Below, in pieces: positions 9,801 to 36,100 of a stretch of 64,000 bases of DNA. The first letter of the stretch is position 1. The number at the start of each line of letters is the position of its first letter. The notes below the pieces were generated by a model. It did no database searches. It was not told the DNA's origin and worked only from the letters and a program-made list of their open reading frames with translations. Position numbers and translations under genes: made by a program. The DNA is from Saccostrea cucullata (lineage: Eukaryota), in assembly GCF_032062105.1 (NCBI RefSeq), contig NW_026926059.1:124001-188000 (forward strand), written 5' to 3'.

Positions 9801-12800
9801 AAACTTAACACTGCTCCAGTGTTCATGCATTTTCCAGCCAAAGGAAAACCTAAGAAAGGAGACACCATGGATATTCACAGGTTTGTTTAGATACTCTTAA
9901 AGGGGCATAACTTTAGACACTAACAAACTGTATGGTTAACAGCCAAAGATAGATAAATATTCACAGGAACAAAGCTGATATTGAGATTTTAAATCATAGT
10001 ATACTTGTGTGTCATGTGATTATATTTTGTTTAATATACAAAATTGTTTTCATTTGTTTTGTAATTTTACAGAGTTGGATTTGCTGCTGAGCAGATTGCA
10101 AAATGGGTTGCAGAGAGAACAGACATAAATGTAAATCAAAAAAGTTTCACTCTTTAAAAACACATATAGAATAAGAAAGGATGAACATTTAAATTTTTTT
10201 TAGTAATAAAGGTAACACAGCTCCTTTTACAGATTTTCTATGTGATAGATTAAATTAAACAGCAAAGTTCACAGTTGCACTTTGTTACTCAAATACTAAT
10301 ATCTCAAATACTTTGGATATATGTATGGCAGTGTGTTGGCAGTCCCAAACACGTTGTTTTTAAATCTTCTTAAAATGAATCCTTTTAAATATCTCAAAGT
10401 GTACTGGTAATCTCTGATCTGTTGAGTTCTAGATAGGAAGATTTGTCTTTTCTGGGAATGACTTTAATTATTATTGTTTTGGATGGTAAATGACAAATTG
10501 GAATGTAAACAACACACTTTTTGACCCATATAATTTTGACAAGATCCTAATTTACGTAAGTTTCTGTTTTGTAGATTCGTGTATTCCGCCCTCCTAATTA
10601 CTCTGGGACTCTGGCTCTGGCACTCTTGTTTGCTCTGATCGGAGGACTTCTATACTTAAAGAGAAACAACCTAGAATTCCTGTACAACAAAACAGTATGG
10701 GGAGTTCTATCACTGGTTAGTGATTTGTCTAATTTGTCTAAATCTATGGAATTCAGCTTGTTTTTGGACTGTAATTAGGTTGATGAATCATGTGCTTACA
10801 GATATTAACTTAATATTTCAGTTTGTAATTTTTGTCATGACTTCGGGTCAGATGTGGAACCACATTAGAGGACCACCAGTGATGCACAAAAACCCATCTA
10901 CAGGACAAATTGTATGTACAGGGTGGCAGGGGCAAGAACTCAATCCAAACAAAGTTATTAAGTTGAAGGGTATTTTAAAGCATGATCCGATAAAATTGTG
11001 GTATACTAGTATATTGTAAACTTATTACATTTGGCTGTGTATTCTATTCATCGCATTTCATGGAAAGGAGCTTCTGCTAAATCAAGTACATTGCTAAATG
11101 TCTTGATTATATATAAAGCAAAATTAAGAAAGCGCTAATTTAAACCGAAGCTAACTTGTTGAAAAAAATCCATTTTGCCAAATATCATACATGCTAAATA
11201 CTGTAGAATACATTTGCAGCATGTGATTAAAAATTCAACTGCAAATGGAAATCTCATATATTATTTTATTTTTACCAATTTGATTTTCACATTAGCTATG
11301 TTTACATACTGTCATTATACATGTATGTTTGGGATCGAGATTCACAAAATCAAATGAGATTTAAGGAATACAACGAACGGACAACTAAGTATGATTACAC
11401 GTACACTGGCCAAGCTCCGAGAACAACAATGAATAAAAAAATATTGATGAGAGAAAACTTTGATGACCCAGCAAAAGTCATTCGTCAATTTTTCCTCTTT
11501 GTCAAACTTTCCACTTTTACATTATGATTTTTTTCATATTTGTAATGGTATTACTAAAATAAGAATATAAATTTTGTTTTCTAACATTTTAATATTTTAT
11601 GCATGTTCTATTTTTCTTCTTCAACAGAATTACATTCATGGCAGCAGCCAGGGGCAGTTTATAGCAGAAACTTACATAGTGTTTTTCTTAAGTATCCTTA
11701 CTAACTGGAAGGGTAAAGGGTAAATTTTTTTTTTATATTTTCTGGCATGTTTACATGAATTTCTATTGACTTTTGTGTAATATTCATTTGCCTCTTGAAC
11801 TTTAAAGCATTACTATTTTTGAGAGAATTACTTTTCAGTTTTAACTGAAAGGGCAATATCTCGTTGCCCCTTGCTTCTTTACAACTTTTCAGTACTGCTT
11901 GAGGTCAGTGTTGAACATGTATTTTATTTCTCTGTGTTGCCTTTTAGATATATGTAGACTCGCAACAGGATAGCCAGACCTGGGCTGAAAGCTACATTGT
12001 GTTTGCTCTTTGTATCTTTGTGCTTTCACTGCTTGTGTTTTTGCAGTTTTACTTTATAAGAAATCTTTCAGACTAAATAAAACAGAATCACATCTTTACA
12101 TTTTATCAACAGCCTACCATCTGGAAGTGGCCAAAGTTGAGGTGCAGTGGTTAGCCTGGTGCTTTGTAAGTCCGCTAGATGGTGTCTTAGTTAAATTGTT
12201 TTTCAACAATTACAGCAGGCATGTCCAAAATACGCAAGAATTGCAGCCCTGATTCTATCATGCAATAAGTTCAGTCTGTGGATATGAGAAAAAATATTTG
12301 TAAGCCTTTTTTAAGGAGGCTCATTACACCACTTTTTGCTGACGTACTACACAAAAAAATAAACCTCCATTGCGTCGACCGGTTTCCTCTGGGGACGAAT
12401 TGTACAGGTACCTCTGTAATATGACCCTGACCTTTAAAACGCTTTAAAAATAGATGAAACATGCGGTGTTATAAACAGTGAAAACAAAGTAACGGATTCA
12501 TTATGCATAAACCAAGAAGAATTGCTTTTAAGCAGAAACAAAAGAAAACAACAGTCAAATCTTCGCCAAACAAGTAATCAGTTTCATAGCGATGCATGCA
12601 GTGAGCTCTATCAATCAATGACATGTTTGTATAGAGGAAATTTGAGTTAAAATCTACAACCTTGTTGAAATTAAAAAGTTATTTACTTGCACTATTTACT
12701 GTGTTGGTGTTAATTTATATATTTGCTTTATTGATTTAAATGTAAAATCTGGCAATTTAAAGCTTTGCTCTGAATTTTAGATGTAATGTCAAACGTTCCT

Positions 12801-14328
12801 TAGTGTTTTGAGTCTTGGGTAATTAGGAAAGATAACTCTTGAAAGTGGACTTTTTAAACCAAATATTTTTTAAATTGGAATTTTCATTTCGTTAAAACAT
12901 TCTTCATTCAATATGTCACATGTAATTCATTGAAATACATTCCTTGTCTCTTCAGAACTCATTTTATTAATGTTTTATGCATAGATTAAAAAGATAATGA
13001 CATTAATTGTTTTCTATGTGAAAATTATTTTTTCTAATGAAATTATTATTAGGTATTATGAGGTATTTTCACTGTGTGTACTTGTCTTAAGAAGATGCCC
13101 ATCATTTGACACTGAAAGTTCTGAAATTCTATTGATAATAAACTTGAAATGAAGTATTTCACTAAAATTAGACAAAAACTAAAAAATTCTATAAAAAATA
13201 TTTATGATATCAATACCCCCATCTGGATATTTGACATCTACATTATAAGTGGTGCTGTATTGAAATCTAAAATAAACTGTGGATGTAATGAGCCACCTTA
13301 AGTGTCTGTTTTTCATATGCTGAAGTCAAGTTGGCATTGTAACCCATGGGCCTCTTTTAACTACATGTACATGTACTTGACTTTGAGGAGCTTTAGACTT
13401 AAAGGTGCATAGACACAGATTTGAAGTTATATTTTCTTTATAATATCACTTTGCATGGCCTTATATAAATAGCATTTTACACGAAATATATTGAAAATCT
13501 TATTTCATGTAAAAGTTACTGAAAGTTTAAATTTTTGGATGGGTTTGATTGACACACCCTTGCACTTTTACAAATTTTAATTTTATTCTTACTCCTGAAG
13601 AAACATACATGTGTTGCTTATTGGTGAACATGAAATTTTTTGGACATATGCAATTTAGTCTGGTGATTTTTGTTGCACTTTTTTGAAAGCAGCGTTTCCT
13701 CTTCTTCTTTTATTTGTATCTCCCTTTCTCTCCTATAAAAAAGAAAACTCATCTCATGTAGCTTTGTCACATTTGTTAATTTTTTATGTAGAAAATATTG
13801 CGATGTTTGTAGGGGAACAATTCCTTAACTAGATTTTTCAGATGCAGCAGTGGTAGGGGGCATAGTTCTACTCAATGAAGCTAATTCTGTCAAAGGAGAC
13901 CCCGGCAAGAAAAGAAGTAAGAAATGACACACTATCATCAGATACTGGATGCCAATTCTTATAGAATTTGTATACAATATATATGTCTTACCTGCAAAGC
14001 CAAAAAATTTATGGAAAAAATTTGTGTACAAAAATTTATTAAAATGCAATGAATGATGTTATAATGTTAAGAATTTTCACTTCAGAGTGTAAATATGTAC
14101 ATAAGACTTAAGTGTTTTTGTTAATTTTTCAGTTTTATCCATGGTAGGGCTGGGATTAGTGGCAATCTTTTTCAGTCTCCTCTTATCTGTGTTCCGATCC
14201 AAGTATCAAGGTTACCCATACAGGTAGGCTGTTCTTTTTCAGTACAGGTGTATAGAAATACAGTGAAATTCTTTATACCAGTTTTATAACAACTGATCTT
14301 TTCTTTTTCCAGTTTCTTATTCAAGTAG
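6817..14328 (+). CDS. TUSC3: MAGT1/TUSC3 (OST3/OST6 family) oligosaccharyltransferase subunit; exons 6817-6903, 8465-8634, ~9568-9685, ~9799-9880, ~10073-10130, 10575-10715, 10822-10911, 11628-11691 (or 11948-12011), 13842-13916, 14133-14223, 14313-14328
   Basis: Signal peptide, thioredoxin-like domain with [54 protein letters not shown] and C-terminal [15 protein letters not shown]. Likely co-ortholog of vertebrate TUSC3 and MAGT1. Confidence 0.95.
8970..9179. mobile_element. Small TIR MITE (Tc1/mariner-like ends)
   Basis: TGTAGATCACTTAATTTTTGCG ... CGCGAATAAAAAGTGATTTACAGTA inverted ends with internal TTCGCG repeats. Confidence 0.5.
11692..13841 (+). other. U12-type (minor spliceosome) GT-AG intron of MAGT1/TUSC3
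   Basis: Donor GTATCCTT at 11692, branch site TTCCTTAAC at 13821-13829 and AG at 13840-13841, with only a short T run between branch site and AG. Confidence 0.9.
11948..12011 (+). CDS. Alternative (duplicated, probably mutually exclusive) exon 8b of MAGT1/TUSC3
   Basis: 64 nt, same length and phase as exon 11628-11691. Encodes [21 protein letters not shown] versus [21 protein letters not shown]. Flanked by ...CCTTTTAG and GTATCTTT. Confidence 0.8.
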
Positions 14329-15664: not shown

Positions 15665-18600
15665 TTAGGACTGTGTCCTGCACCAATCAAAAGCATTCTG
15701 GAACATCTTAAACCATGGTGACACATCAAACTTCCTCATTTCCTGTGGCATCCATGCACACTGCCATGGCAGAAAGCACCGCTCGGGATGAGGCATGATG
15801 GCAAGATGGCGGCCGTCTTCTGAACAAATGGCGGCGATCCCGTTACGGGATCCATTGGGATTGAGAGGGTAGACCTCGGTGGGCTTCCCCTGATCATCCA
15901 CATACTTCACAGCTATCAGATTGTCTCTACACATATCCTGATAAATCCCCTCCGAACGGAACACCATTCTCCCTGTAAAATGTTATGAAACATTATTTTA
16001 TCTGTAAATGGATGAATTCAAACTGGGACAAATTCAGAGTAAACAGCATTTTCTGGATGATTTTTAAATGGAGCTAATTATATAAATTAAATGCAAGGGT
16101 GAAAATGATTCTGAATGCACAGTAAATGAAGGTAGACTAAGCTGAAATTTTCATTCTGAATTTTTAAAAAATATTTTACAAAGTTGCTTTCAAACTTCTC
16201 TGCAAACACATTTTACCTATGATATTTTATCTTCATTGCTTTTCCAAGCATCTGATGGTAGTTTATTTAATCTAACATCTATGCCTTTATGTTAAATTAT
16301 AAAGTAGAAATATGTCCATAAGACATGAACGCCCCGCCAAGGATATATTAGTAATGCAACATGGAAAATTTGTATGAAATTTGAATGTCTTGATAATATC
16401 TTGATAAGTGATGCAGTTGAATTGCTTACATCAGTATGTATCAGCATATGAAGGTTTACATTAATTTCTTTAAAGTGAGGTCAAGGTCAAAGAAATGCCA
16501 AGGTCAAAAAATATTGACGCAACTGAAAAGCTCTCATCAGTATGTATCAGCATACCGTATGTCGTTTTAATTCCAGTGTTAATATTTCTTGATTTCTCAA
16601 AAAGTAAACAATCGCGATGGTTTTAATTTCACGATGCAAGAAATTAATTTGAATTTTGTATAAGCATTTAATAAACGTTTTTAAAAATATTGTATATTCA
16701 TGGCGGGGCATAAAAAACTTTCATGACCCAAAATATCAAGAAATTTTTCAGAAACACTTGTATCTATAATTGCATGTGTAGAGATAAATGTTGAGAATGT
16801 AATTCTACCTTCCCCGTGGGCGCTCCACATCCCAAACACTGTATCCTCCATCCCTCTAAACATGATGGCCGGACTCTTCATCACCCGTACAGAACTGAAG
16901 CGACACTCAAATCTCTCAGACAAGTTGTGATCCAGAAAAAGGCCCTGTCCAACACCACTGTTACTGTTTTCTGTGTTCAAAAAAAAAAAAAAGAATGCAG
17001 AGTTTATCTAGTAGTGGTGATCAATTTTATTTTGCTTCATTTATTGTAGAAAAGTAAGGAAGAAAAATTTTATTGCCCATGAAGGGGACATAAAATTGTT
17101 CAGATTGTTATTCAAATTTGATGTGGGAACTACAGCAAATTGGAGCATTCCCTTACAATTTAGGCATGACTGCTACAAACAGGACCATGTCTTTACAATT
17201 TGGCACTGTTACAAAGTGGATCATTCCATCTCAATCTTAACACAGGCCCTGCTACAAAGGGACCATCCCCTCACAATTTTAACAGAAGCAGAGAATTGTT
17301 TTACCTTTGAGGTCCTCGTCGGGAGCGACCCAGCCCAGCAGTGCCATCAGCTGACAGCCATTACAGACCCCCAGACTAAACGTGTCAGGTCTCTCCTTAA
17401 ACTTTAACAGCTGTTCTCGCACACTTTGGTTAAACAGGGCAGTAGCAGCCCAACCTGTAAACAAAAAGAGAAATCAAAATATGTACAATTTGCAAATGTT
17501 CGAAAGGTGGTGCAAATTATTTATCATTCATTTTCAATCATCTTGGATTTAAAAACTTTAAAGAATTCGCAGTTCAAGATTTCTATAGTGCCATGAATAA
17601 TGTAATGTAAATCTCAAACTACGTTGTAGAAACAAACCTTTGGCAGATCCACATACATCAGCATAGCTAAAGCCTCCAACAAAAACTAGTCCCCTAAACT
17701 GGTCCAAGTTTATTTGTTCTGAGCAGAGGTCCTCCATGTTAACATCCCACACCTCAAAACCGGCCATGTGGAGTACGGCGGCCATCTCTCGGTCAGAGTT
17801 ACTTCCCTCTTCTCTAAGAACCGCTACTTTTGGCAAGGGTTGACCTGTCAGGAGCAAAATACATGTCTAGTGTGACTCGTGTATGCAAAAAAATTGTCAC
17901 TGCCACCCAACTGTAATGATATAAAGTGGAAAAAAAGAATTCAAACTTTTTTAACATGTATTCAGTTTTAAAATAGACAATTTCTCTAACAGCATGTTTT
18001 CCCACAAAATAAACTTTTTTTTTTTAAACTGCTTTTAGGATTTCATTGTAAAAAGGGCAGCTGTTTTAACATGAAATAGTGCACGGAACAGTGAAGTTAC
18101 TTTCAACAAACATTTGTAGCTTTGATAAAACTTGTATTATACAAAAACTCATGCATTTCATAACATGCCTTGTAAGCAGTGACGGTGAAAAATCAACACA
18201 TACTTGTTGGTCTACCTCTCTGGGAAAAGGATATAATCTCAGATTCAAATGGCACATGATAAGGAGGCTCTAGCCTCTCTTTCAGTCCTGTTTGTTCCTG
18301 GGTTACACATTTGGGATTGGCTTGAAGAAATTCTAACTGAAAACTGGTTTCTTCCCAGATATCTCTTAACACTGTCATTTTCTCTTTTATTACCTCCAGA
18401 CCTCTTATGGATATATTCACCTAAAAAGACAACATTCAGTAAGATTTAAAAGATTACTCAGTTACAGGTGTATACATTTCATTTGATAATCAATGTTATC
18501 GTATGGCAAAATTTGACATTGTGCTTATAAATGGCATGTTAATCTGCTCATGTACAATAAGAAACAATTTTATTTTATCACATTCAAGATACACATACAT

Positions 18601-30600: not shown

Positions 30601-33074
30601 TATTCCTGTCTGTCCATATTCACATCAGATTGAGGGTATTACTAGTGAGCACTGGCTCACAGAAATCAAACAAACAAACAAACAAACAACCAAACAAACA
30701 ATAATATAGTTACATACAAAGAACATCATACAACTGCGTTACTGCTCAGATCTGAGAAAATCTGCAACAGAATCAATGATTTTTCTAGATTTTGTCACAC
30801 GCACACTGTTATCTGTTATCTCTGTCAGCACATCCTGTACTCCCTCCCTACCATTTCTGCGATAAGCCAGTTGTAAGTGTGATAAGGAGAGTCCACTGCT
30901 GGCAATCTTATTTGCCATTCCATTCGAAATCACCTTTTGGTCCAATAAAGGCTTTAGTGTGCTCATTAGACTTTTTGTTGTGTTCTTGTGATGGAATATG
31001 GCAAAGGCAGAGTTTGAAGTGAAAGATGCAGCAAGTTTGACTTCAGGGGAAGGTCCTGTATGGTCCAACAATCTCTTCAAGGCTAAGACATCCTGTAATG
31101 AGTCATGCGCACTGTATTTGTCTTGTAGAATTTCTTCGAAGAGGTGTAACTGTGAGTATGATGAAAGGTTTGGATGCGAAATTTTGAAAAGAGGTAAGGT
31201 ATCAATGAAACCAATGACTGCAGATGAGAATGCCTCCAAAATGTTTAATTTACTCAAAATGTTGAACAGCACAGGAAGGTCAAACACTTTGGAGTTGTGT
31301 CCAACTAGAACAGCATCTGACTCCGATTTCTTTATGAAGCCGATAAACTGGATCAGTGCATCCTTAATGCTGACTGTCTCAACTTCCTCATCATTGTGGT
31401 ACATTTTATTGTTGACTACTTTTATTCCAGTAATTTCTGTAGCTTTTGAGGACATTGGTTTTTCTGGAATGATGTATTTGTTGAAAACCTCATCATTTCT
31501 AACTGCAGACAACTGCACAATATGAGAATCCCTTGCTAAAAATAAAAAAACAAATAATTTAATTTTGATTGTAACGCATCATTTGATTGGATAAAAAATT
31601 AATCTAAATTGTATAATCTGGTTTGCTTACGTCACAATGACTTACATCAAATTGTATCAATCCGCTTGACGTTACGTTTAAAATATGAACTATTTGAAGG
31701 CATTATAAAGAGAAAATCTGTCTTGTTTTATATTCTTGATGATTGAAAATTAAATCATAAGGAGTGAATTAAATGGCAACCCAAATTATACTGCTACAAC
31801 CTGGGTTGGAGCAGTTTACGCTTTTTTATAAACCGCTTTGAGGTTTAGAAAGCATAAACTGCCCCAACCCAGGTAATACAGTATAATTTGGGTTGCTATT
31901 TAATTCATTCCGTAAGTAAATTCAAGTTTTTAAAATTAAAAGCATTAAAAAAAAATACATATAAAAATTGATATATTGTAAATGTATTATATTTAGCATG
32001 TATGATATTTGGAAGAAATTGACTTTTGAATAAGTAAGCGTAGATTTGATTTAGTGCATTTCTTCATTTTCTTCTTTATGTGTATATGTGCAAGACATTT
32101 AGCGTTGTACTTGATTTAGCGGTCCGCTATTAGAATACACAGCCAAATGTAATCCGTTTACAGTATGCATGATTTAAAAAATTTTGAAACATTATAATAA
32201 TAGTAACCCTCTTCCCCAAGACTTAACTCCTTCAAAGATGCTTGAATTCTTTCAGAATATGCAATTTCTTTTTAATCAGTGTCCTCAGAAGGAAGGGTAA
32301 AGTTTTGAAAGATATAAAACATGCTCAACTACTTGTACCAATACTGGAATTATGCAAGAGTCTCCATTTCTATTTGTTTTCTATGATAACTCTAGTATTA
32401 TTATTTCAAAATGCATACAAAAAAATACCGGAAGAGGGCCATAACCATCAGCATTGACTTAACATTTAAATCTAGGTTCTTACCGAGTCCAGTAGTTTCC
32501 AAATCAAAATAGATCTCTTCAGCATTTAAGAGCTGACTTGAAGGGAGATGATCATACTTTGGAATTGTTTTTGGAGCTGGAATTTCAACGATGTCAGAGG
32601 CCTGCTGGAGATCACATCCTGTTAAATAACTGATGCCTTCCCTTGTTTCTTTTGTAGAAATACTTTGAATTCTGTAAAGAAGATGTATACTGTAAAACAA
32701 ATGATTCTAAACTGAGGTCTTACTAAAGGCCTAGCAAAATAAACAATCACCTAATGTACAGCTAATGAATTAGGAGTTGTAAATAAATGAAAATCCTGAG
32801 CACATCGGCAAGGAAAGAGCACAAAGTAGACCAGAATAGAAAAGTTATGGTACATGTAATTTACTGAAGGGGGGGGGGCTTATATTTTATCACTACTTAA
32901 GAATGCCTCCATATCAATACAGCATATAACTTTTTTAACATTTTGTTCGTATATATTACTTAGTAATAATTTGAATTTGATTCCCCACCGTTTCCCTCCC
33001 TACCACAAAGGATCAGGATTGAAACAAATTTAAATCTTCAATTTTCATTTCCATATGACTAAACATAGCTTCTC

Positions 33075-33107
<33 letters not shown>

Positions 33108-36100
33108 ATTTTTTCCCTTTATTTTCCTATGTAAAACTTTGATCCACCATGTATGATTTGAAAAAAAAATTAATTCTACTTTACCTGAGGATGCTTCCAT
33201 ATTAATATCACCAATCATAGCTTTGCTATTCTTGAGAATTTTTTTAAAAATATATTGTACTGTAAAATGCAATTGTGGCCCCGCCCTATCCCTGGGAGTC
33301 ATGATTTAAACAATCTAGAATCTACACTACCTGAGGATGACTTCATATCAATATCACTTATCATGGCTTTGCAGTCCTTGAGAAGAAGATTTTTAAAGAT
33401 TTCAAATTCTCTATATATTCCTGTGTAAAACTTTGATTGGCTATGTGGTCCCACCCTATCCCCCAGGGTCAAGATTTGAACAAACTTGAATCTACACTAC
33501 CTGAAGATGATTCCATATGAGTTTCATCTTACCTGGCCCAGTGGATACTAACTTTGTAGCAAGTTTGGTTGAAATTGGCCTAGTTGTTCTTGAGAGAAAG
33601 ATGAAAATGTGAAAAGTTAATGACAACAGATACATTTTTATCAGTAAAGCTCACTTGAGCTTTCCGCTAAGGTGAGCTAAAAAAACTGGGTATGTAGGTA
33701 GGTAAAATTTTTATTTTAAGATTGCAGCAAAGCAATATGCCCTCCCTTCTTTGAAAAAAATATTTATCAAACCATGCTATTTATACAAGCATACCGTAAA
33801 TCTTTGGTGATTCAGAAAACAAATCTTAGTAACATGCAAGATATTAATTCCCACTTAAATTCATACTTATCATCATTCACTTGTTCTTGGTTTATTTTCA
33901 TTTTTGAGGTTGTCAAAAGGTTTTTTACACCTGACAAATGACAATCAAAGTATACTAGTACGTACTTCCTGGCTTTCAATTCTCTCCTTCTCCTTTTAAA
34001 TTTTTGTGTCACTGAAATGGCCTTCTGTCGCTTTCTTTGTAAATCCCTCAGAATGCACTGTCGTCGAGTATAGTAGCCAGGAGAGAGGCCCAATTTCTTG
34101 TTAACCTTTAATAAGGATAAAAGAATCTATTATGTACAACTACAATGTACATACATATACAATACAATTTGCTTTTGATTAAAATTTGCAGAATTTTCAA
34201 ATGTAAGAGATAACTTGAGTGGTTCAACTCATATATGACACAATAAGCATGAAAAAATAAAAATTTACAAACCTTTACAAGATATTTGTGTCCAACATTT
34301 TTCTGGGCTACACATGCAGCAACTCTATATCTGAGGCTTGAAGAAGAGCTGTAATGATGGGTCTTTGGGGCTTTTGCAGACACCATTCTGTGAAAACTCT
34401 CATTCGACTGTGTGCTTCCTAAGCATGAAAGACGATCAGAATGACTTGCATATGAACTGAAGACTTCTTTCAGATCATCCTGAAGGAACCTATCTTTCAG
34501 GGGTTTTCCATGTGGAAGTGACTTGTACTTCAGGTTAGGGTTGTTAATGAAGTTGCACCACCTTGAGGAGCAGTGTTGGTGATCTCCAAATATGTGTAAT
34601 GGAATTGATGAAAGGTCTTTGATTTGAGAAGCATTTCCTTTTCCCTGTGCTATGGAGTAACTGAAGCATTTCTGAATGTACTTTATCACAGACAAAGTTA
34701 GAGTTGAATGTTTTTTCTTTAAGGTAAACAAAGAGTTTGTAAACAGTTTCTTTAGATGATTTTTATCAGACAACTTCTTAATATCAGCATTGACATTAGC
34801 TTTCAGTCTTGCAATAGTGGTAGAGTCCTCATCTCCAATGATTCCATCAATGGTTATTCCTTTACTTTTCTGTAGATCTTGGACCATCTCAATAACCATA
34901 TCTGCCTCCATGGCCTTTGAACTACCCTCCCAATTCTTTGAGCACTCATGGGCTGCTGGATTCTTGTTGGTTGATTCAGCTACACTGCATACTCTGCAAT
35001 TCTTAGACCTCAGAGAGTATGACAATACTTTGTCGGAGAGAGGACCAACCATGGAACAATGACCTGAAAAATTACAAATTAGAAAAACTGTATAACTTAT
35101 AGATGTATTCGTTGTTTTTATTAAAGCATTTTTCATGCATTTCTTAACTTAATAAAATGTATGTCTTAATACTTTGGCAAGGAAAATCATACTCGATCAC
35201 TGATGTTACATGTATGCATTTGGTAATAACCTTTAACCCCTTTAGTCAGCAATGAACCTGTGCGTCCAGTGCACTATAGCATAATTGGGTCAAATATTTA
35301 TTTTTCACGAGGGGTGCTGTATAAATAATGGAAATCGTTCAACTTTAAAAAAGTAAACAGTTGCTTTAAAACGTGTTTGCAGAATGCAATAGGGACCAAA
35401 TTCCTACTTCTTTGAAGTTAAGTGTTCTAAGTATTGACAATGCTTTGGTAAATAATGTTTCTAATAAGTGTCGTTAAAAATTGGTTGCGTGCCATAGAGC
35501 GATTAGCGAATACGCTAACTGTGTAAAATCACCTAATATTTTAATATTTTGATTTGACTCATTATGAGTCTTAATGATTTTTCTCCTATATATATTTCCG
35601 TGTAAACATTATATCTTTTTTTGGCTCCATTATCCCACCTTGGGTCCATATTTCGAACAAAACTGAATATGCTTTACCTGCATGAGCAACATAACTATTC
35701 ATGGCTGTTCTTTAGAAGAATATTTTACAATTTATATGGACAGTTGAACTTTGAGATATGTGCCTTTCTAAATTTATTGCATCTGTTTGCATACATATTT
35801 AATGGAATCAAGTCCTAAGCAAACTTAATGCATAGTTTATGTTGGGCACAAGCGGAAAGTAATCACTCTAATCATCAATATTTTTTTTTATTTTCCTAAA
35901 ATTTGTCTACTGTAGAAGCATAAATTTTCGTGGGCATAAAATTTTTTTGTTCTGACATCAAAAATAATCTCGTCGTTGTTTTAAAACTAACCCTAGGTCT
36001 AAAAAAAAATATGTTTGTTTCCTGTAACCCGACCGACCCATTCAAATTACCCCCCGGGTGAATTTTTTTATTGACAAATGGCAAAACTTCGTTTGATCAA

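What the first reader, a model, noticed from the sequence alone, without database searches (positions are those of the whole stretch)
11628..13841. Hidden mutually exclusive exon pair in MAGT1/TUSC3, apparently locked by U2/U12 incompatibility
Seen: two 64-nt exons of identical phase (11628-11691 and 11948-12011) with alignable peptides ([21 protein letters not shown] vs [21 protein letters not shown]). Each has a pyrimidine-tract acceptor and a U12 donor (GTATCCTT, GTATCTTT), and they share one downstream U12 branch site, TTCCTTAAC. The intron between them has a U12 donor but no U12 branch consensus near its AG. Established: a hybrid-intron arrangement of this kind is known for the mutually exclusive exons of vertebrate JNK genes and is rare. 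Inference: two isoforms of an OST subunit differing in the conserved loop before a transmembrane helix. One gene might thus supply the diversity that vertebrates get from two paralogs.
Basis: partly seen in the sequence, partly recalled or inferred. Interest (0 to 1): 0.85.

Follow-up and report, generated by a model that had tools for sequence, protein, structure and literature searches.

The report
Spliceosome-locked exon swap in oyster MAGT1/TUSC3
An oyster gene for a subunit of the enzyme that attaches sugars to proteins carries two versions of one small exon, arranged so that the cell's two splicing machines cannot join them directly; this arrangement was known from a few vertebrate genes, and I found it in this gene across bivalves, worm-like animals and acorn worms.

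Summary
Observation confirmed. The single OST3/OST6-family gene (exons identical to Saccostrea cucullata RefSeq X1) has two 64-nt copies of exon 8. Each has a U2-type acceptor and a U12 donor; they share one U12 branch site. Exon 8b keeps its frame and U12 donor in four oysters, mussel, scallop and probably ark clam, and RefSeq lists 8b-instead-of-8a proteins for Mytilus and Pecten. The same layout occurs in hemichordates, four annelid-like contigs (one with three copies) and one unidentified eukaryote with AT-AC ends. Limits: raw reads from a related oyster gave 174 joints into 8a and none into 8b, so the oyster 8b isoform is not shown. The lock leaks: oyster RefSeq X2 models join 8a to 8b through a cryptic GT donor 21-31 nt downstream, giving an early stop. 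The paralog analogy fails, since vertebrate MAGT1 and TUSC3 are 17-18/21 identical in this exon against 9/21 here. The mechanism is the known JNK/TMEM87 type; I found no paper on this gene or on invertebrates, and no earlier scan note.

The parts
6817..14328 (+). MAGT1/TUSC3 (OST3/OST6 family) gene, 11 coding exon positions: 6817-6903, 8465-8634, 9568-9685, 9798-9880, 10073-10130, 10575-10715, 10822-10911, 8a or 8b, 13842-13916, 14133-14223, 14313-14328
   Evidence: PF04756 exon by exon; frame check; the nine exons tested (2-7, 8a, 9, 10) identical to P0371; only family locus found in G000
10822..10911 (+). Exon 7 with U2 donor GTATGT, common upstream partner of 8a and 8b
11628..11691 (+). Exon 8a, canonical and dominant form (luminal loop plus start of TM3)
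   Evidence: 100 and 74 reads join exon 7 to it, 89 and 57 join it to exon 9; identical peptide in four oysters
11692..11699 (+). U12 donor of 8a (GTATCCTT)
   Evidence: used in reads; U12-type in all orthologues examined
11699..11705 (+). TACTAAC directly behind the U12 donor, invariant in four oysters; possible QKI/SF1-type element or distant U2 branch point (inference)
11713..11718 (+). Cryptic U2-type donor (GTAAAG); its use extends 8a by 21 nt and joins it to 8b out of frame, stop at 11971
   Evidence: reproduces the tail of RefSeq P0373 exactly; equivalent donor reproduces P0375 in Crassostrea angulata; not seen in reads
11692..11947 (+). 256-nt hybrid intron: U12 donor, pyrimidine-rich AG acceptor without U12 branch site
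   Evidence: an unspliced contig covers 11729-12045 at depth 11.9 against about 690 for the mRNA
11948..12011 (+). Exon 8b, diverged duplicate
   Evidence: orthologues in L019, L020, L029, L012, L017 and probably L014; pS 0.74 and pN 0.24 against Ostrea, Fisher p 0.0014
12012..12019 (+). U12 donor of 8b (GTATCTTT), the same variant in oysters, mussel and scallop
13821..13829 (+). Shared U12 branch site TTCCTTAAC
13842..13916 (+). Exon 9, common downstream exon with U12-type acceptor

Best explanation
Exon 8 was duplicated in tandem together with the U2 acceptor in front of it and the U12 donor behind it. The major spliceosome joins exon 7 to 8a or 8b; the minor spliceosome joins the chosen exon to exon 9 through the one U12 branch site. 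The intron between the copies has a U12 start and a U2 end, so neither machine removes it (inferred from the JNK precedent), and transcripts with both or neither exon are out of frame and stop early (computed). 8a is the default (shown in reads). 8b is an old, minor, probably tissue- or stage-restricted coding alternative (inferred for oysters; annotated in mussel and scallop). It replaces the second half of the luminal TM2-TM3 loop and the first half of TM3 and leaves the thioredoxin domain unchanged. TM2-TM4 is the face that binds STT3, and in yeast it sets the 2.8-fold rate difference between Ost3p and Ost6p complexes (10.1101/2021.05.17.443621), so the 8b form most likely makes an OST-B complex with altered turnover (inference). 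In oysters the lock leaks through a cryptic U2 donor, and that product is probably degraded.
For: Exact anatomy. U11 and U12 genes in the genome. 8b open in the substitution frame with a U12 donor in 7 of 7 pteriomorph bivalves. pN well below pS against Ostrea. RefSeq substitution isoforms in Mytilus, Pecten, Ptychodera and Glandiceps. In all 11 duplicated loci scored the U12 branch score is 11.1-12.7 at exon 9 and at most 5.0 at either copy. L009 has an AT...AG inter-copy intron and an AT...AC last intron. No direct 11691-11948 joint in reads. The model of the mussel 8b isoform keeps a continuous TM3 helix at residues 259-289.
Against: No 7-8b or 8b-9 joint in four runs (upper bound about 1.7% if truly zero). 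None of the 15 listed oyster cluster members uses 8b in frame. 8b evolves far faster than 8a (7-14/21 against 21/21 identical among oysters). RefSeq isoforms are predictions whose read support I could not inspect. The structure model was built on an alignment dominated by 8a sequences. Spliceosome incompatibility and the effect on OST were not tested.
Confidence: 0.7

Rival explanations
1. In oysters 8b now serves mainly as a poison exon: when U11/U12 recognition of the 8a donor is weak or blocked, U1 uses the GT just downstream, 8b is added out of frame and the message is destroyed, which ties gene output to minor-spliceosome activity.
For: The only 8b-containing oyster RefSeq products found are of this kind, in two genera (P0373, P0375). 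A GGTA cryptic donor and TACTAAC behind the U12 donor are conserved in four oysters. 8a has 1 synonymous change in 21 codons against Ostrea, against 106 in 245 for the other exons (p 0.0003).
Against: Selection on 8b acts in the substitution frame (pN below pS, Q-T-x-x-E-[ST] and a hydrophobic tail kept). The position of the stop in the poison frame is not conserved. Cryptic U2 donors next to U12 donors are a common by-product (PMC8329584). The synonymous constraint is not seen against Crassostrea (7/21). The joint was absent from reads.
Confidence: 0.15
2. The exons are mutually exclusive, but mainly through the frameshift and decay of double-inclusion transcripts, or through a steric distant branch point at TACTAAC; the U12 donors are only inherited with the duplication.
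For: Every copy is 3n+1 nt, so co-inclusion always shifts the frame. Frameshift is far commoner than incompatibility among human clusters (377 against 5 of about 630; PMC5740500). TACTAAC lies 8 nt from the donor.
Against: AT...AG inter-copy introns in L009 fit neither spliceosome's usual ends. Where oyster models do co-include, they avoid the U12 donor and use a separate GT, as incompatibility predicts. TACTAAC is absent outside oysters, and several AGs lie between it and 8b.
Confidence: 0.1
3. 8b is a decaying relic that is no longer used in oysters.
For: No spliced reads; fast divergence; no second copy found in Mactra, Gigantopelta, Ridgeia or gutless-oligochaete-like contigs.
Against: Length, frame, acceptor and U12 donor are intact in all four oysters while synonymous sites are near saturation; the same exon is annotated as coding in mussel and scallop.
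Confidence: 0.05

Closest known systems
U2-U12 hybrid intron of vertebrate JNK genes (MAPK8/9, exons 6a/6b; PMC1874599)
   Same: Two alternative exons, each with a U2 acceptor and a U12 donor; unspliceable hybrid intron between them; one default exon.
   Different: Different gene; invertebrate; exons are 3n+1 so decay can back up the lock; a cryptic U2 bypass is annotated in oysters; three-copy and AT-AC versions exist in relatives; tissue control is unknown here.
TMEM87a/b exons 11/11a (PMC6717393, PMC8329584)
   Same: Same interlocked arrangement, with the second exon hidden inside an annotated minor intron of a membrane-protein gene.
   Different: Those exons are 72 nt and frame-neutral, and their tissue specificity is shown; not shown here.
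Tandem duplicated exon substitutions arising convergently in orthologous genes (PMC9741552)
   Same: The same gene carries such events in separate animal lineages.
   Different: Here it is the same exon each time, flanked by a U12 intron; MAGT1 and U12 are not mentioned in that paper's main text.
Yeast Ost3p/Ost6p isoforms (10.1101/2021.05.17.443621)
   Same: Two versions of the oxidoreductase subunit; there the rate difference maps to TM2-TM4, the region swapped here.
   Different: Paralogous genes, not exons; they also differ in the thioredoxin domain.
Vertebrate MAGT1 and TUSC3
   Same: Orthologous family (6S7T chain H, E 1e-139); both are listed as minor-intron genes (PMC7507305).
   Different: The two paralogs are 17-18/21 identical in this exon; no alternative exon 8 seen among the vertebrate proteins fetched.

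Membership tests
OST3/OST6 (MAGT1/TUSC3) | PF04756 match along the gene | tested here: met
   six exons match PF04756, five at or above the cut-off score; 8b alone does not match
OST3/OST6 (MAGT1/TUSC3) | Thioredoxin domain with CxxC followed by four membrane helices | tested here: met
   CSVC ends exon 2; mussel model matches Tusc3 crystal structures at rmsd 0.9-1.6 and has four long C-terminal helices
U12-type intron | RTATCCTT-type donor | tested here: met
   GTATCCTT at 8a; one-base variant GTATCTTT at 8b, conserved in bivalves
U12-type intron | TCCTTAAC branch site about 10-20 nt from the acceptor | tested here: met
   12 nt; conserved from corals to bivalves
U12-type intron | Minor-spliceosome snRNAs present in the organism | tested here: met
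   three U12 and three U11 matches over cut-off in G000
U12-type intron | Splicing depends on U11/U12/U4atac/U6atac | not testable with these tools
   needs knockdown or compensatory mutation
Hybrid-intron mutually exclusive exons (JNK/TMEM87 type) | Homologous same-phase exons, each U2 acceptor plus U12 donor, one shared U12 acceptor | tested here: met
Hybrid-intron mutually exclusive exons (JNK/TMEM87 type) | Inter-exon intron lacks a U12 branch site near its end | tested here: met
   score -1.2 against 11.9; only the last 40 nt were scored
Hybrid-intron mutually exclusive exons (JNK/TMEM87 type) | Both substitution isoforms are expressed | tested here: inconclusive
   8a yes, 8b no joints in four runs of a related oyster; RefSeq predicts the 8b isoform in Mytilus and Pecten
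Hybrid-intron mutually exclusive exons (JNK/TMEM87 type) | No co-inclusion of the two exons | tested here: inconclusive
   no direct joint in reads, but 8b was not used there at all; RefSeq X2 models co-include through a cryptic GT donor
Hybrid-intron mutually exclusive exons (JNK/TMEM87 type) | Tissue-specific switching | not testable with these tools
   one read-laying run, tissues not disclosed

The most novel reading that the evidence does not exclude
An exon that sits between a U2 and a U12 intron is pre-adapted for mutually exclusive splicing: any tandem copy is exclusive from the start, for any number of copies. MAGT1/TUSC3 exon 8 has used this route at least twice (once early in spiralians, with a later third copy in annelid-like animals, and separately in hemichordates) to vary the STT3-binding face of OST-B, and oysters have added a minor-spliceosome-sensing decay switch on top.
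Probability: 0.35. Interest if true: 0.78.

Novelty: new member of a known kind. Interest (0 to 1): 0.62.

Why it matters
Spliceosome incompatibility is the rarest proposed lock for mutually exclusive exons (five human clusters, PMC5740500), and the worked examples I found are all vertebrate. This adds an invertebrate gene with two-copy, three-copy, GT-AG and AT-AC versions, which is a natural series for testing whether a flanking U12 intron favours the survival of duplicated exons. It also points to an undescribed isoform of an OST-B subunit that changes a loop nearly invariant across animals (G5 and Q8 together in 237 of 259 proteins), which could tune N-glycosylation by tissue.

Tried and rejected
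RNA: one read-laying run (two raw-read runs and two contig sets, organism about 95% alike) gave no 8b joints. The little depth over 8b in X21 (about 300 bases) fits one unspliced read pair. Paralog analogy rejected. Competing RNA hairpins: only short chance-level inverted repeats. A second family gene in G000: none found; L006 and L007 are degenerate orphan copies of the 8a region. Counting origins by tree: 21 codons are too few; AU tests reject neither one origin of the bivalve and annelid-like copies (p 0.29-0.43) nor adding the hemichordate copy (p 0.11-0.18). Naming the organism of L009 failed. Four literature searches on this exon pair or on hybrid-intron exons in invertebrates found no description. 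The joined spliced model of the window was not sent to any search tool: exons were searched by reference, database proteins served as full-length queries, and exons were joined only inside scripts to check frames. Six vertebrate-like metagenome loci (L078, L083, L084, L093, L098, L099; L093 could be human) were printed once by a bulk script and then left out of all comparisons.

Full report
Observation. The gene has 11 coding exon positions from 6817 to 14328 and matches PF04756 exon by exon. It is the only family locus found in G000. The nine exons tested are identical to the RefSeq protein P0371, Saccostrea cucullata isoform X1, so the window is almost certainly from that oyster. Exons 8a and 8b are both 64 nt and share 9 of 21 residues. 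Either alone keeps the 330-codon frame. Both together stop at 11971, 204 nt before the last junction; skipping both stops at 13854.

Splice signals. Both copies end in U12 donors. The only U12 branch site is at 13821-13829. A small branch-site matrix trained on single-copy orthologues gives -5.3 and -1.2 at the two copies and 11.9 at exon 9. U11 and U12 genes are present in the genome. The U12 intron is old: corals, annelids, a gastropod and clams have it at the same place, and human MAGT1 and TUSC3 are listed as minor-intron genes (PMC7507305, which does not name the intron in the passage read).

RNA. The runs available come from a related oyster about 95% alike. Two raw-read runs gave 100 and 74 joints from exon 7 into 8a, and 89 and 57 from 8a to exon 9. 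No joint into or out of 8b was listed, and none between 8a and 8b (joints need 3 reads to be listed). If the true count is zero, 8b use is below about 1.7% in those samples. One contig covers 11729-12045 unspliced at under 2% of the mRNA depth. So the oyster 8b isoform is not demonstrated here.

Conservation. 8b is present, open in frame and followed by GTATCTT in Crassostrea gigas, C. angulata and Ostrea edulis (64 nt), in Mytilus edulis and Mizuhopecten (58 nt) and probably in Tegillarca (64 or 70 nt). Against Ostrea, pS is 0.74 and pN 0.24 (Fisher p 0.0014), which indicates purifying selection in the substitution frame, though much weaker than on 8a. RefSeq holds proteins with 8b in place of 8a for Mytilus galloprovincialis, M. 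trossulus and Pecten maximus (P0284, P0286, P0385). These are predictions whose read support I could not see.

The leak. Two oyster RefSeq X2 proteins contain both exons. P0373 (S. cucullata) is reproduced exactly by 8a plus 21 intron bases, a GT donor at 11713 and 8b out of frame. P0375 (Crassostrea) is reproduced by the same route with a 31-base extension in the C. angulata locus. Co-inclusion therefore avoids the U12 donor and uses a separate U2-type donor, which fits incompatibility, and it produces an early stop. TACTAAC directly behind the U12 donor and a GGTA further on are conserved in all four oysters. Whether this is a regulated decay switch or ordinary cryptic splicing beside a slow U12 site (PMC8329584) is open.

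Wider distribution. Glandiceps has two copies with GTATCCTTT donors and one branch site, and both Glandiceps and Ptychodera have RefSeq isoforms for each. Among metagenome contigs, four annelid-like loci carry extra copies: L040, L062, L094 and L102, the last with three; two of the extra donors are GTATCCAA and one is GCATCTTT. L009, an unidentified compact-genome eukaryote, has two copies with ATATCCTTT donors and a shared AC acceptor. No second copy was found in Gigantopelta, Mactra, Ridgeia, coral-like contigs or gutless-oligochaete-like contigs. Many extra copies share proline at position 5 or aspartate at position 8. A protein tree groups the bivalve, annelid-like and L009 variants (92/83) apart from the hemichordate pair. 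Both hemichordate copies carry the E-T-H motif of deuterostomes and corals, where protostomes mostly have E-T-Y. Two origins is my best reading, but 21 columns and long branches do not settle it, and AU tests do not reject a single origin.

Function. In the model of the mussel 8b isoform the exon forms the end of the luminal loop and the first half of the third membrane helix (helix 259-289; loop confidence is low and the alignment is mostly 8a). TM2-TM4 of Ost3 bind Stt3 (PMC7226087), and in yeast chimeras that region sets the 2.8-fold rate difference between Ost3p and Ost6p complexes (10.1101/2021.05.17.443621). I therefore infer that 8b changes OST-B turnover or assembly and not substrate capture by the thioredoxin domain. 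This is untested.

Comparison with what is known. The layout is that of JNK exons 6a/6b (PMC1874599) and TMEM87a/b (PMC6717393, PMC8329584). Hatje et al. found five such human clusters, 0.79% (PMC5740500). Convergent exon duplication in orthologues is documented (PMC9741552). It works like the JNK system and meets its anatomical criteria; the expression criteria are inconclusive in oysters.

Procedure notes. The joined spliced model was not sent to any search tool; exons were searched by reference and joined only in scripts for frame checks. Six vertebrate-like loci, one possibly human (L093), were left out.

Verdict. Interest 0.62.

Noticed in passing
window 4771-4944 (- strand), upstream of 6817; L029 1-232: A sarcoglycan gene (PF04790) lies head to head with MAGT1/TUSC3, also in Ostrea edulis. 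From my own knowledge SGCZ and TUSC3 are neighbours on human 8p22, which would make this a very old gene pair; a paper search found nothing.
   Followed up: partly
L006 1501-1754 and L007 1501-1762 (G000 C12618, C9049): Two orphan copies, about 75% identical, of the stretch around exon 8a with no other exons nearby and a damaged frame or donor; possibly fragments carried by a transposon.
   Followed up: partly
window 11628-11705: Exon 8a differs from Ostrea edulis at 1 of 21 synonymous codons against 106 of 245 in other exons (p 0.0003), and TACTAAC follows the donor in all four oysters: possible splicing-regulatory constraint.
   Followed up: partly
L102 2598-3400: Three tandem exon-8 copies in an annelid-like contig, donors GTATCCTT, GTATCCAA and GCATCTTT, one shared U12 branch site.
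   Followed up: partly
L009 11193-11877: Unidentified eukaryote with two exon-8 copies and AT-AC ends; both copies have lost the canonical loop sequence.
   Followed up: partly
protein P0150: An unnamed full-length homologue uses the proline-5/aspartate-8 variant of the loop that is otherwise seen in the extra copies.
   Followed up: no
window 1733-1863: Near-perfect hairpin, 64-nt arms 92% complementary with a 3-nt loop, probably a miniature transposon.
   Followed up: no
window 15665-17420 (- strand): 3' exons of a gene with a GATase_5 domain, probably FGAM synthase, converging on MAGT1/TUSC3.
   Followed up: no
window 539-1519, 30739-31518, 34108-35136 (- strand): Transposon-like open frames: DUF3504/QRICH1, exonuclease with PML_C, and a Mutator-like transposase.
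   Followed up: no
window near 12076-12081: AATAAA about 65 nt after the 8b donor, close to where the unspliced contig ends; not seen at the same place in Crassostrea.
   Followed up: no
L014 25331-25984: Tegillarca has several tandem degenerate repeats of the end of exon 10 with its donor.
   Followed up: no
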